A stretch of DNA of 64,000 nt from Macrostomum hystrix. Lineage: Eukaryota; Animalia; Platyhelminthes. The DNA is taken from positions 3,348,001-3,412,000 of the forward strand of contig CATNEN010000005.1 of NCBI GenBank assembly GCA_950097015.1. Direction: 5' to 3'. The notes below the pieces were generated by a model. That model worked only from the letters and a program-made list of their open reading frames with translations, was not told the origin of the DNA and made no database searches. The position numbers and the translations under genes are program-made. Below, piece by piece: positions 60,421-64,000 of the stretch (position 1 is the first letter of the stretch; every line of letters begins with the position of its first letter).

Positions 60421-60659
60421 TCATCGATTTATTGCCCTGAAGCTTAATTATCAATCACTATGTCTTTCTACATGCCGCACTTTCTGTTGCGAGACGAAGT
60501 TCCATTCGAGTTGTCGATCTGTTTTGCATCGATGTCAACTACGCTCAAGCCGCTTTCGAAGTCCGGCTGACTGACGACCATTTTAGCACTTTAGAATTGA
60601 GCTATTTGGGTTTGAATGCAGATAGATAATAATCGACCCAGATAAAAGTGCAGACCAAA

Positions 60660-60998
60660 TAATAGTAGGAGGGCTGCGGGCAATGGCACATCATTTGGTG
60701 ACACTAGACCCGCAGCCAGCGAGGAGGCAATTCTGCCCATTTCGCTGACTCCTGAGCACACACGCACACAGATACTGTACGCAGGCACACGCTCACACAG
60801 GTGTGTACATCTGCCCTGACTTTCTCATCGTCAGGCAGTATCAACTTCACTGTGCCTAGGAGGTTGGCCCTCAAGGGCGTAAATTGCACGACAAGCCCCC
60901 AAGCCTTCTCTCCGCGGCTGCGCACCAAATTAATGTGGCCTCGCTGCGGAATCGAACTTAGGGACCTTGGTGCGAGAGGCAAGCTCGTTAACCGCTCT
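60660..60998 (-). mobile_element. SINE family A, full length
   Basis: Reverse complement of the 59065 family with intact A/B boxes. Confidence 0.92.
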
Positions 60999-61964
60999 TC
61001 TACCAACCCCCAAGTAGTAGTATATACTGTGTATATACCAGGCCAGGTCATATAGATGTAGCAGGTCTCGACCAATTTTTTTATTTTCAAAATATTCCGC
61101 TAACGAGTTTGTTTAAACGGTTAAAAAAAATTTTTTTTTCAAACTTACGCGATAAATACTTGAAAATATATTTAAATAATTAAATATCTGCTTGTTTTTT
61201 GTTTAAAAACGCGAGATATTTCTAATATGTACTAACGTAGTGATTGAGTTTAATTATTAACTGCTCTCTTGTGAACTTATTTGATTTGCTATAAATCCAG
61301 CAAAAACTATTCCAAGCCTTGGAATCATATTTGTCTACTTGCAGTGCAGCAACGCAGGGACATGAGGTTGCACTGGAGAACACTAAGTTATTTGAAAAAG
61401 GGCTTTAGAATATGTTTGAGCAGTCCGTAACAATTCACAAAATTAGACTTGCTAATGCTCATTTTTCCTAAATTTTAGCCTCTTAAAACGTCTTTACTCC
61501 GATGTGGCCATCGCGTTTTTTAATTTCCTTGTTAATTAACCAGCTGCATCGCCCTGCTACGAGTAATTGCGATGCAAGATGTAATAAACAAAAGAAAATA
61601 AAATTGGCTTAAAAACCTTGAAATAAAGCTTCAAATAAATTGTGAACTGCTGGTAATAGTGGGGCCTCTTTAATGAGTCCAAAACTCATCGCTATGTTTG
61701 GTAAAGCTGCATCGGCACTCACTGAAGAGGTGCTTTGAGCATCTAAATCCATGCTTGAGCTGACATTAAGAGGGTTGAAGGAAACAAGTCCAGACTTCCT
61801 CTCGTTGTACAGGTATGAAGGACTAGAAATATTCCGTCAAATTTCCCATTAATAATGCACTTGCTTTCTCTAATCAATTTATAGTAAGCCTATAAGTTTG
61901 TATAGCGAGACCAAAACTCCTTGATAGTCAGCCAAGAGAAAATTTGTAACACTTGCTTTCAACA

Positions 61965-62345: not shown

Positions 62346-63008
62346 TAGAATTTTAACCCAGGATTTAATGCCACAGGCCATTGTTGAAAGGTAAAGAACC
62401 AGAAGGTAAGATTTAAAGCATTTTACTGATCTCAGCGAAAAAGCTAAAGTTATCTTTTAACAATTTCTTTAATTATGAGTACACGTGTATGGCGATGAAA
62501 TATAACAAAACAATGAAATAAAATTGAGCGTGCTGAATAATATTAAAATCACTGTTCGTTAGATAAGTGTAGCATGCGCTAATAGAGAATCAACAATCTA
62601 CTCTGAGCTTCAAACTTTTATAAAATATAAAAACGCGCTGCATTTGTTTAAAGAGTATTGAAATATAACACGCTATTTTCCCCCTGGGAAAATACGCACT
62701 GCCAACGAGCTACTTCACGACAGCTCCAAAACCGAATGACCGATTTTCGTGAAAGTCCGCCATGTTTTCTTTCGATTTCCAAGAAAACTTGAAAGCTCAT
62801 AAATAAATTTAACCGTCAATGGAGACGTCATTGTTCAGCGTTATGTACAATGCTCACGTGTATTTGCACTAATTTCATTGTGACAGTGAGTCATGAGACA
62901 TTCCTAGATTACTTTTATATATTTTAAGTGGGTCATTTTTTTGAAAATACCCAGCATTCCTCCTCATCTCACCCTGTTTATTATCTCACCATGTCTCTCA
63001 TGGCCGCC

Positions 63009-63180
63009 GGGCTTAAGGCACGGCTGGGCCCCGCGGGCCAGCCATGGAGGTCCCATCGAGACCGAGACCACGTATAGTGGTCAGTATCTCCGCCTGTCAC
63101 GTGGAAGGTCCGGGTTCGATTCCCGGTCGGGGAGCCATGGCTGGCCCGCGGGGCCCAGCGGCCAGCCGTGCCCAAAGCCC
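63009..63180. other. Palindromic element: inverted GC-rich arms ending in CA, each followed by a tRNA 3'-end complement
   Basis: Arm 63009-63044 versus the reverse complement of 63138-63180 (22-nt perfect core, 25 nt with the TGG); TGGAGGTCCCATCGAGA at 63045-63061 resembles the complement of the tRNA-Gln 3' end. Confidence 0.75.
63072..63137 (+). pseudogene. 5'-truncated tRNA-Asp(GTC) copy (positions 10-76, CCA encoded)
   Basis: D arm GTATAGTGGTCAGTATC, anticodon stem TCCGC/GTGGA with CTGTCAC loop, T arm CCGGG-TTCGATT-CCCGG, acceptor 3' strand TCGGGGA-G-CCA; positions 1-9 absent. Confidence 0.9.
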
Positions 63181-63289
63181 TAGGGTCAAATAGAACAGAG
63201 CGATAATATAAGGAGCCGCAACTCCCAACTGGCTCGACACAGTTGTGAATCAATTCTTGGCCAGCCTTCAGTCCTAAGTCATTACAGGA

Positions 63290-64000
63290 ACTAAAACTAG
63301 AATCGAAGCAGGAACTAAAACTAGAATCGAAGCAGGAACTAAAACTAGCATCGAAGCAGGAACTAGAGCTAGAATCGAAGCAGGAACTAGAGCTAGAATC
63401 GAAGCAGGAACTAGAGCTAGAATCGAAGCAGGAACTAAAACTAGAATCGAAGCAGGAACTAGAGCTAGAATCGAAGCAGGAACTAGAGCTAGAATCGAAG
63501 CAGGAACTAGAGCTAGAATCGAAGCAGGAACTGGAGCTAGAATCGAAGCAGGAACTAGAGCTAGAATCGAAGCAGGAACTAGAGCTAGAATCGAAGCAGG
63601 AACTAGAGCTAGAATCGAAGCAGGAACTGGAGCTAGAATCGAAGCAGGAACTAAAACTAGAATCGAAGCAGGAACTAGAGCTAGAATCGAAGCAGGAACT
63701 GGAGCTAGAATCGAAGCAGGAACTAGAGCTAGAATCGAAGCAGGAACTAGAGCTAGAATCGAAGCAGGAACTAGAGCTAGAATCGAAGCAGGAACTGGAG
63801 CTAGAATCGAAGCAGGAACTAAAACTAGAATCGAAGCAGGAACTAGAGCTAGAATCGAAGCAGGAACTAGAGCTAGAATCGAAGCAGGAACTGGAGCTAG
63901 AATCGAAGCAGGAACTAAAACTAGAATCGAAGCAGGAACTAGAGCTAGAATCGAAGCAGGAACTAGAGCTAGAATCGAAGCAGGAACTAGAGCTAGAATC
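63290..64000. repeat. 24-bp minisatellite (AGGAACTAGAGCTAGAATCGAAGC), runs off the window
   Basis: Tandem periodicity. Confidence 0.97.

What the first reader, a model, noticed from the sequence alone, without database searches (positions are those of the whole stretch)
63009..63180. Palindromic arm-CA-PBS element carrying two different mature-tRNA 3' ends (Gln and Asp): candidate fossil or non-autonomous unit of an undescribed tRNA-primed retroelement
Seen: two inverted GC-rich arms of 36 and 43 nt (GGGCTT..GGCACGGCTGGGCCCCGCGGGCCAGCCA), each an imperfect hairpin and each ending in CA immediately followed by TGG. On +, TGG continues as TGGAGGTCCCATCGAGA, 16/17 identical to the complement of the conserved tRNA-Gln 3' end UCUCGGUGGGACCUCCA (recalled from human/C. 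elegans). On -, TGG continues as the complement of tRNA-Asp including CCA, running 66 nt and stopping exactly at G10. The two halves are joined by a 10-nt linker containing a CGAGAC duplication. Established: LTRs end in CA followed by a TGG primer-binding site. RT copying of a tRNA primer normally stops at m1A58 (~18 nt). m1 purine at position 9 also blocks RT, and human tRNA-Asp carries m1A9 (TRMT10B). As I recall, yeast tRNA-Asp lacks m1A58. Inference: the two lengths (17 nt for Gln; through to position 10 for Asp) match what modification-limited reverse transcription of mature tRNAs would give. The locus may therefore be two strong-stop-like cDNAs fused tail to tail, or a tiny element whose arm uses several tRNA primers. 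If transcribed from the retained internal B box, it would fold into a tRNA body on a ~40-bp GC stem.
Basis: partly seen in the sequence, partly recalled or inferred. Interest (0 to 1): 0.85.

Follow-up and report, generated by a model that had tools for sequence, protein, structure and literature searches.

The report
Retrotransposon strong-stop cDNA fused to tRNAs
This is a one-off genomic scar in a flatworm, where the first DNA piece a gypsy-type jumping gene makes when copying itself ran on into two mature tRNAs and was pasted into the chromosome; it is a curiosity, not a new kind of mobile element.

Summary
Two inverted GC-rich arms each abut a CCA-bearing mature tRNA copy: tRNA-Asp positions 10-76, and the tRNA-Gln 3' end.

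The interpretation does not hold. The arm is not an LTR terminus. It is nt 160-195 inside the 303-bp LTR of an ordinary, recently active 4.6-kb Ty3/gypsy-type element with about 20 LTR copies and an intact 1333-aa PR-RT-RNaseH-IN ORF. In every other copy the arm continues into LTR sequence, not TGG.

In the window, the right arm continues through the rest of the LTR (nt 160-303, presumably R-U5) and stops at the terminal CA. Both tRNAs join the same LTR nucleotide, sense to sense.

I read this as minus-strand strong-stop cDNA that reached the element RNA's 5' end and template-switched onto tRNA 3' ends. It stopped before A58 in Gln (18 nt) and before A9 in Asp. Two such cDNAs met 3' end to 3' end and were captured without a target-site duplication.

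The junction is unique in the genome. No Pol III terminator follows. The transcription start at nt 160 is inferred, not shown. Only the left half is confirmed by independent contigs.

The scan also read this same stretch in another window (s1-332695).

The parts
63009..63044 (-). Left arm. An inverted copy of LTR nt 160-195, the first 36 nt of the presumed R region of the gypsy-type element.
   Evidence: 35/36 identical to about 20 LTR copies. Homology ends at 63009; the flank to the left is unique in the genome.
63045..63068 (-). tRNA-Gln positions 59-76 including the post-transcriptional CCA, with a 6-nt tandem duplication (TCTCGG/TCTCGA). The copy ends just before A58.
   Evidence: Comparison with 5 native tRNA-Gln genes, which end in GAGTCTCGGTGGGACCT without an encoded CCA. 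The exact 14-mer is unique to this locus.
63069..63071 (.). 3-nt filler (CAC on the + strand) where the two copied tRNA ends meet.
   Evidence: Matches neither tRNA-Gln positions 56-58 nor tRNA-Asp positions 7-9 of the native genes.
63072..63137 (+). Mature tRNA-Asp(GTC) positions 10-73 plus CCA (63135-63137). The 5' truncation lies just 3' of A9.
   Evidence: Rfam tRNA 35.7 bits. 98% identical to at least 8 native genes from G10 onward; native genes lack CCA. The native 3' end plus CCA (15-mer) is unique to this locus. ARAGORN calls no gene here.
63138..63286 (+). LTR nt 160-303 (presumed R-U5, the extent of minus-strand strong-stop DNA) of the gypsy-type element. It runs in sense orientation and ends at the LTR's terminal CA. 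The right arm is its first 43 nt and contains a 7-nt insertion.
   Evidence: 87-91% identical to the LTR copies over the whole stretch, starting at the same nucleotide as the left arm.
63285..64000 (.). 24-bp satellite that directly abuts the LTR end, overlapping it by the 2 nt CA. It forms the right flank of the insertion and is not part of the chimera.
   Evidence: TRF: period 24, at least 58 copies, 95% matches, running past the window end (sequence).

Best explanation
The locus is a fossil of aberrant reverse transcription by a Ty3/gypsy-type LTR retrotransposon of this Macrostomum-like flatworm.

Proposed steps:
1. Minus-strand strong-stop cDNA was made, copying U5 then R up to the 5' end of the element's RNA.
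2. It did not perform the normal first strand transfer. Instead the reverse transcriptase jumped end-to-end onto the 3' CCA end of a mature tRNA and kept copying until it met a blocking base.
3. One such cDNA copied tRNA-Asp back to G10, stopping before A9 (m1A9 in human tRNA-Asp).
4. A second copied tRNA-Gln for 18 nt, stopping before A58 (m1A58).
5. The 3' ends of the two products met, with 3 nt of filler. One strand was copied on the other, or the two were ligated, giving arm-Gln'-filler-Asp-arm.
6. The double-stranded product was captured in the chromosome by end joining rather than by normal integrase action. It has no target-site duplication, the left arm is cut off after 36 nt, and the right end lies at the LTR terminal CA with 2-nt microhomology to the satellite.

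Shown: the identity and orientation of all parts, the mature-tRNA origin, a shared junction nucleotide, and uniqueness of the junction.
Inferred: that LTR nt 160 is the RNA 5' end, that base modifications caused the stops, and the route of joining and capture.

The locus is most likely inert.
For: 1. The arm belongs to a bona fide LTR element.
- LTR pairs lie about 4.3 kb apart. The LTR is 303 bp, TG..CA, with a 5-bp TSD (GAGTA). A PPT-like AGAGGGGAGA precedes the 3' LTR.
- The 1333-aa ORF has PR, RT, RNase H and integrase in gypsy order.
- The 5' and 3' LTRs are 99.4% identical in L032.

2. Window 63138-63286 is collinear with LTR nt 160-303 in sense orientation and stops at the LTR terminus. 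This is the extent of strong-stop DNA if the RNA starts at nt 160.

3. Two different tRNAs are joined, sense to sense and CCA-first, to the very same LTR nucleotide, the T of TGGCTGG. This is the topology expected when a cDNA reaching a template's 5' end continues on the 3' end of another RNA. Priming by the tRNA would put the antisense of U5 after the CCA.

4. CCA is not genome-encoded in the native genes, so mature tRNAs were reverse transcribed.

5. The end points fit known RT blocks.
- Gln stops after G59, that is 18 nt. m1A58 is a known RT stop (PMC8599865).
- Asp stops after G10, and the native genes have A9. TRMT10B makes m1A9 specifically on tRNA-Asp in humans (PMC6800469).

6. The orthologous M. 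lignano LTR keeps a motif (ACGCGTGGCT) just upstream of the equivalent point, and CCTAGGGT plus AATAAA downstream. This fits a U3/R boundary there.

7. Capture of LTR-retrotransposon cDNA intermediates at chromosome breaks by end joining, with the LTR as a hotspot, is documented in yeast (PMC11372161).

8. The two arms differ by a 7-nt indel and two substitutions. An independent contig covers the left half without a difference.
Against: - No RNA data could be laid on the LTR, so the transcription start at nt 160 is an inference from the shared junction.
- An Inr-like TCAGTG lies about 35 nt upstream. No clear TATA box sits at -30.
- The possible 5' hairpin of R does not fold better than shuffled sequence.
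- tRNA modification in this flatworm is unknown. In most animals tRNAs carry m1A58, so read-through in Asp has to be assumed.
- True strong-stop DNA would carry 2 more nt (AA) beyond the LTR end. These are absent.
- The right junction lacks independent read support.
- It is a single event, so no statistics are possible.
Confidence: 0.6

Rival explanations
1. The arm is the CA-terminated end of an LTR-like repeat followed by TGG primer-binding sites for several tRNAs. The locus would then be a fossil or non-autonomous unit of an undescribed tRNA-primed retroelement, or plus-strand strong-stop products that read into their primers.
For: - CA-TGG follows both arms.
- Read on the minus strand, 63286-63138 begins with TG and ends with CA.
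- Other LTR families in this genome do carry 48-66-nt read-through copies of a tRNA-Asp-like primer next to their U5 end (L010-L012).
Against: - In all of the roughly 20 other copies the arm is internal to a 303-bp LTR and is followed by LTR sequence.
- No separate 144-nt unit exists elsewhere in the genome.
- The junction 17-mer is found only here.
- The family's PBS-like sequence, 2 nt after its real LTR end, is TGGCGACGAG..., matching neither tRNA.
Confidence: 0.03
2. DNA-level origin. A chromosomal or solo-LTR copy broke at LTR nt 159/160. The 3' ends were then extended on tRNA templates by a repair polymerase with reverse-transcriptase activity (Pol theta-type RNA-templated repair). A variant is that the two ends of a chromosomal break each primed on element RNA and then on tRNAs, followed by microhomology joining.
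For: - There is no TSD.
- There is 2-nt microhomology at the satellite junction.
- There is a 3-nt filler and small tandem duplications of 6 and 7 nt, typical of error-prone end joining.
- Short inverted templated insertions at breaks are known in yeast (PMC11724301, abstract only).
Against: - It requires two independent ends at exactly the same LTR nucleotide, which an RNA 5' end explains without extra assumptions.
- No U3 remnant lies on either side.
- There is no microhomology between the left flank and R nt 37 onward.
- The stops at 59 and 10 are the classic retroviral-RT stops.
Confidence: 0.17
3. Assembly or sequencing artefact, such as a foldback chimera in a long read.
For: - The structure is a palindrome.
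- No listed short-read contig covers 63150-63183.
Against: - The arms are not identical: they differ by a 7-nt indel and 2 substitutions, and different tRNAs sit on the two sides.
- The left flank through to the Asp part is reproduced without a difference in a 366-nt contig at about 60x word depth.
- Technical foldbacks mirror whole reads rather than 36 nt.
- The tool states that a hole in coverage proves nothing.
Confidence: 0.05
4. A functional small-RNA gene: a tRNA-like body on a long GC stem, transcribed from the internal B box. Alternatively, a nascent tRNA-derived SINE.
For: - The B box and most of the A box are retained.
- The stem is strong.
- There is a weak, sub-threshold resemblance to a Y-RNA model, 22.8 bits against a gathering score of 80.
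Against: - It is single copy.
- tRNA positions 1-9 are missing.
- There is no TTTT on the + strand for more than 860 nt downstream.
- No RNA run holds the stretch.
- ARAGORN finds no gene.
Confidence: 0.03

Closest known systems
Chimeric retrocopies made by reverse-transcriptase template switching, such as the U6-L1, 5S-L1 and tRNA-containing chimeras of mammals (Buzdin and colleagues; recalled from memory, not checked here)
   Same: A cDNA that reaches or leaves one RNA continues on the 3' end of a small abundant RNA. The result is a sense-to-sense fusion with the small RNA upstream.
   Different: Here the enzyme is that of an LTR element rather than a LINE. The donor end is the strong-stop point of the element's own RNA, two such products are joined head to head, and there is no poly(A) or TSD.
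Strong-stop-DNA model for the origin of tRNA-derived SINEs (Ohshima, Okada and colleagues, PNAS 1993; recalled from memory, and not in the searched library)
   Same: A CCA-bearing tRNA is joined to the R-U5 part of an LTR, both derived from strong-stop DNA.
   Different: In that model the tRNA is the primer, so CCA is followed by the antisense of U5 starting at the LTR end. Here CCA is followed by sense R starting at its first nucleotide, which means the tRNA was a template. This locus did not amplify.
Capture of Ty1 cDNA replication intermediates at double-strand breaks by NHEJ in yeast (PMC11372161 and the earlier work it cites)
   Same: LTR-proximal cDNA fragments carrying cDNA-only nucleotides are inserted without a TSD.
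   Different: tRNA-extended strong-stop products and an inverted pair are not mentioned in the passages of that paper that I read. The host here is a flatworm and the event is natural and fixed in the assembly.
Read-through of plus-strand strong-stop DNA into the primer tRNA beyond m1A58 (m1A58 as RT stop: PMC8599865)
   Same: The length of the tRNA copy is set by modified bases. The 18-nt Gln piece equals the canonical PBS length.
   Different: That process places the tRNA complement after the U5 end. This genome has such cases (L010-L012), but the window locus has the tRNAs at the R start instead.

Membership tests
Ty3/gypsy (Metaviridae-type) LTR retrotransposon: the source family | Direct LTRs with TG..CA ends and a short TSD | tested here: met
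   L032 has 303-bp LTRs that are 99.4% identical, TG..CA ends and a 5-bp GAGTA duplication.
Ty3/gypsy (Metaviridae-type) LTR retrotransposon: the source family | Pol domain order PR-RT-RNase H-IN | tested here: met
   Pfam on the 1333-aa ORF places PR at 302-396, RVT_1 at 494-651, RNase H at 714-847 and integrase at 950-1132.
Ty3/gypsy (Metaviridae-type) LTR retrotransposon: the source family | PBS complementary to a tRNA 3' end next to the 5' LTR | tested here: inconclusive
   TGGCGACGAG starts 2 nt after the LTR. It would fit a tRNA beginning GACGAG (Ser-like). Such 5' ends exist in the genome, but the genes could not be fetched.
Integrated LTR element or solo LTR: the window locus itself | Complete LTR (U3-R-U5) flanked by a TSD | tested here: not met
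   Only LTR nt 160-303 are present, plus an inverted copy of nt 160-195. There is no U3 and no TSD.
   The arm is internal to the LTR in all other copies and is followed by CCTCAACC.... The junction is unique.
Template-switch chimeric retrocopy | The acceptor RNA is copied from its mature 3' end | tested here: met
   Both tRNA pieces carry a CCA that is absent from the native genes.
Template-switch chimeric retrocopy | The junction lies at the 5' end of the donor RNA | not testable with these tools
   Both junctions are at LTR nt 160. No RNA run was available to map the transcript start.
tRNA-derived SINE | Multi-copy, intact Pol III A and B boxes, terminator or tail, TSD | tested here: not met
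   The locus is single copy. tRNA positions 1-9 are missing. There is no TTTT downstream and no TSD.
tRNA gene | Complete cloverleaf without an encoded CCA | tested here: not met
   ARAGORN finds nothing in the window. Rfam matches only model positions 10-63.

The most novel reading that the evidence does not exclude
The locus may be a natural snapshot of a route by which LTR-retrotransposon particles fuse packaged tRNAs to their own R-U5 leader.

Such fusions carry a Pol III B box next to sequences that the element's RT and integrase recognise. They could therefore be the raw material of tRNA-derived, LTR-dependent SINEs. This is a template-switch variant of the old strong-stop model.

The locus would also record in DNA that flatworm tRNA-Asp has an RT-blocking base at position 9 and an RT-passable A58.
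Probability: 0.12. Interest if true: 0.7.

Novelty: new variant of a known kind. Interest (0 to 1): 0.4.

Why it matters
If the reading is right, the locus preserves several things that are usually seen only in vitro or in engineered systems:
- a failed first strand transfer of an LTR retrotransposon;
- end-to-end template jumping onto tRNAs;
- modification-limited copying of two different tRNAs;
- capture of the product by the host's repair machinery.

It also gives a testable prediction for the family's transcription start, at LTR nt 160. It predicts the tRNA modification pattern of a flatworm: an m1A9-type block in tRNA-Asp, and an m1A58 block in tRNA-Gln but not in tRNA-Asp.

It does not reveal a new class of mobile element and is probably without function.

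Tried and rejected
- I first took the element for Ty1/copia because of its small size and single ORF. The Pfam domain order corrected this to Ty3/gypsy-type.
- tRNA as primer. Neither the sense nor the antisense LTR strand has complementarity to the Asp or Gln 3' ends next to nt 160, and the orientation is wrong.
- An internal PPT-like plus-strand start at nt 160. The preceding bases GGTTGAGG are purine-rich, which would give a discrete 5' end. It offers no polymerase route to a tRNA-CCA junction, so I rejected it as less parsimonious.
- A TAR-like hairpin at the R start as support for a boundary. The folds are no better than shuffles, with z from -0.5 to -0.9.
- The 10-nt perfect palindrome AGCCATGGCT at the Asp junction. 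I judged it probably chance, about 1 in 16 beyond CCA/TGG, and found no mechanism that needs it.
- A 12-nt similarity between the left flank (63001-63012) and the right arm. About 0.3-0.5 such matches are expected by chance, so I ignored it.
- A search for a paralogous empty site. The left flank is unique.
- Other fragments starting at LTR nt 160, or other CCA-bearing native tRNA-Asp copies. None were found.
- Exact-protein look-up of the element's ORF, to find transcripts. It is not on record. Its closest relatives (M. lignano at 83%, and a JGI contig at 62%) are genomic contigs and give no transcript ends.
- RNA evidence. No RNA run holds the stretch. Run X9, from another organism, only holds tRNA-Asp 3' fragments.
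- Literature searches for a described strong-stop-to-tRNA jump found nothing specific. One query was rejected for syntax.

Full report
**What is there**

The window is eukaryotic. It lies on contig C5 of a 220-Mb, 42-contig assembly. The best protein match of the element discussed below is to Macrostomum lignano at 83%. Earlier notes of this scan also call the genome Macrostomum-like.

- A 36-nt GC-rich arm lies at 63009-63044.
- TGG plus the complement of a tRNA-Gln 3' end follows.
- A short linker follows that.
- A sense copy of tRNA-Asp from G10 to CCA lies at 63072-63137.
- An inverted, 43-nt version of the arm ends the structure.

The repeat finder gives a 25-nt perfect inverted core plus a 19-nt outer segment at 89%. 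Rfam scores the Asp part at 35.7 bits over model positions 10-63. ARAGORN finds no complete tRNA in the window. As single-stranded DNA the region folds at -69 kcal/mol, z = -8.7 against shuffles.

**The tRNAs are copies of mature tRNAs of this genome**

At least eight native tRNA-Asp(GTC) genes match 63072-63134 with one difference, C>T at 63109. They start TCCTCGATA before G10, which the window does not match. They are followed by varied trailers, never by CCA. The native Asp 3' end plus CCA, as a 15-mer, occurs only at this locus.

Native tRNA-Gln genes end in GAGTCTCGGTGGGACCT. On the minus strand the window reads GTCTCGG-TCTCGA-TGGGACCTCCA. This is Gln positions 59-76 with CCA and a 6-nt tandem duplication. 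The exact window 14-mer exists nowhere else in the genome.

The Gln copy is thus the classical 18 nt that end before A58. The Asp copy ends before A9.

**What the arm is**

It occurs in pairs about 4.3 kb apart. In every other copy it is followed by the same LTR sequence (CCTCAACC...), not by TGG.

Self-comparison of L032 defines two repeats. After removing the 5-bp target duplication (GAGTA), these are 303-bp LTRs with TG..CA ends. Between them lies one 1333-aa ORF on the strand opposite to the one on which the arm was first read. Its domains are protease, RT, RNase H and integrase, in the Ty3/gypsy order.

In the element's sense orientation the arm is LTR nt 160-195. The LTR reads ...GTTGAGG then TGGCTGGCCCGCGG.... 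A PBS-like TGGCGACGAG begins 2 nt after the 5' LTR and overlaps the ORF start. It matches neither Asp nor Gln.

The family has about 20 LTR copies at 89-100% identity and looks recently active.

**How the window relates to the element**

Window 63138-63286 is collinear, in sense orientation, with LTR nt 160-303. Identity to the various copies is 87-91%; four to six substitutions, a 7-nt insertion and a small indel separate it from the closest ones. It stops at the LTR's terminal CA.

The left arm is the inverted first 36 nt of the same segment, 35/36 identical.

Both tRNA pieces are joined by their CCA ends to the same LTR nucleotide, sense to sense. No other fragment in the genome starts at nt 160, and the junction 17-mer is unique.

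To the right, a 24-bp satellite begins, overlapping the LTR's CA by 2 nt. To the left the flank is single copy. There is no target-site duplication.

**Mechanism**

The order tRNA...CCA followed by sense sequence starting at a fixed point is what a reverse transcriptase produces when it reaches the 5' end of one template and continues on the 3' end of another. If the tRNA had been the primer, CCA would be followed by the antisense of U5.

Two different tRNAs share the same junction nucleotide. The segment runs from that nucleotide to the U5 terminus. From these two facts I infer that nt 160 is the 5' end of the element's RNA, and that the segment is R-U5, the extent of minus-strand strong-stop DNA.

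On the window's minus strand the cDNA would read as follows.
1. Antisense U5-R.
2. The tRNA-Asp complement, positions 76 to 10.
3. 3 nt of filler.
4. Sense Gln 59-76.
5. Sense R 1-36.

The last two parts require a second cDNA (antisense R followed by the Gln complement) as template or ligation partner. Two extended strong-stop molecules therefore met 3' end to 3' end.

The stops fit known RT blocks. m1A58 is a retroviral RT stop (PMC8599865). m1A9 is made by TRMT10B specifically on tRNA-Asp in humans (PMC6800469). The native flatworm gene has A9. That these bases are modified in this species is an inference.

Several features point to capture by end joining, or at most one-ended integration:
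- the absence of a TSD;
- the truncated left arm;
- the filler;
- the small tandem duplications;
- the 2-nt microhomology at the satellite.

Capture of Ty1 cDNA intermediates at breaks, with LTR hotspots and cDNA-only nucleotides, is documented in yeast (PMC11372161).

**Support for a U3/R boundary near nt 160**

The orthologous M. lignano element (L080, 315-bp LTRs) has an LTR too diverged for blastn. By eye it shares ACGCGTGGCT shortly upstream of the equivalent point. Downstream it shares CCTAGGGT, followed by AATAAA in M. lignano and by AT-rich AATATAA in this genome. This is compatible with promoter, then start, then poly(A) signal.

It is weak evidence. An Inr-like TCAGTG lies about 35 nt upstream. 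The possible 5' hairpins do not beat shuffles.

**Is it real DNA?**

Run X1, possibly the assembly's own sample, yields a 366-nt contig without a difference over 62736-63101. No listed contig covers 63150-63183, and the tool warns that holes prove nothing.

The arms differ from one another and carry different tRNAs, which argues against a technical foldback. No RNA run holds the stretch.

**Is it functional or mobile?**

The locus is single copy. The tRNA lacks positions 1-9. No TTTT occurs on the + strand for more than 860 nt downstream. A Y-RNA-model hit is far below threshold, 22.8 bits against 80. I regard it as inert.

**Contrast within the same genome**

Read from the antisense strand, their U5 end abuts a tRNA-Asp-like PBS. 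Three copies (L010, L011, L012) extend 48-66 nt into the tRNA. Another family has an 18-nt tRNA-Gln PBS.

This shows that Asp- and Gln-type tRNAs are used by retroelements of this genome. It also makes the different topology of the window locus stand out.

**Verdict**

The 'new tRNA-primed retroelement' interpretation is not supported. Its core intuition, modification-limited reverse transcription of mature tRNAs by an LTR-element RT with two strong-stop-like cDNAs joined, is supported in modified form.

The locus is a new variant of known kinds of event: template-switch chimeras and cDNA capture. Interest is moderate.

Noticed in passing
window 63285-64000 and beyond (L001 1786-3191): A 24-bp satellite (consensus unit CAGGAACTAGAGCTAGAATCGAAG), at least 58 copies at 95% matches. 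It starts exactly at the end of the LTR fragment and runs past the window end. A 23-bp-period array 630 bp from a full-length element in L032 (8256-10000) did not match it by blastn.
   Followed up: partly
window 62710-62765: A very high-copy repeat of about 55 bp. Its summed word depth is about 10^5 in run X1, against about 60 for the flanks. Hundreds of contigs diverge on both sides. The repeat was not identified.
   Followed up: no
L010 1497-1566; L011 1505-1562 (-); L012 1505-1552 (-): Copies of two other LTR families (at least 38 and at least 40 matches) whose U5 end abuts a tRNA-Asp-like PBS (standard copies keep about 14 nt, as in L073/L074). These three copies continue for 48-66 nt into an antisense tRNA-Asp-like sequence that has its own variant bases (GACTCC, GGTCAGGGAACCA). 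They are likely plus-strand strong-stop read-through into the primer.
   Followed up: partly
L042, L045, L046, L053, L068 (around position 1500): The full 18-nt tRNA-Gln 3' end with CCA, flanked by unrelated repeated sequence and followed by AAAATTATGT-like sequence. It looks like the antisense view of an 18-nt tRNA-Gln primer-binding site of yet another LTR family.
   Followed up: no
window 60657-61011 vs L032 1513-1859: An 87%-identical repeat of about 350 bp shared between the window and the neighbourhood of a full-length element on another contig. It is unrelated to the LTR family and was not identified.
   Followed up: no
L080 1186-1500 and 5524-5838 (M. lignano NIVC01000860.1): An orthologous gypsy-type element in M. 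lignano: 83% protein identity, LTRs 99.7% identical to each other, and the same TGGCGACGAG PBS/ORF-start arrangement. The LTR is diverged apart from short motifs (ACGCGTGGCT, CCTAGGGT, ATATAAG).
   Followed up: partly
window 63081-63137, run X9 (organism B): An adapter-bearing small-RNA-like library of another organism holds abundant tRNA-Asp 3' fragments ending in CCA. One of them matches the window over 63081-63118, including the T at 63109 that differs from this genome's native genes.
   Followed up: no
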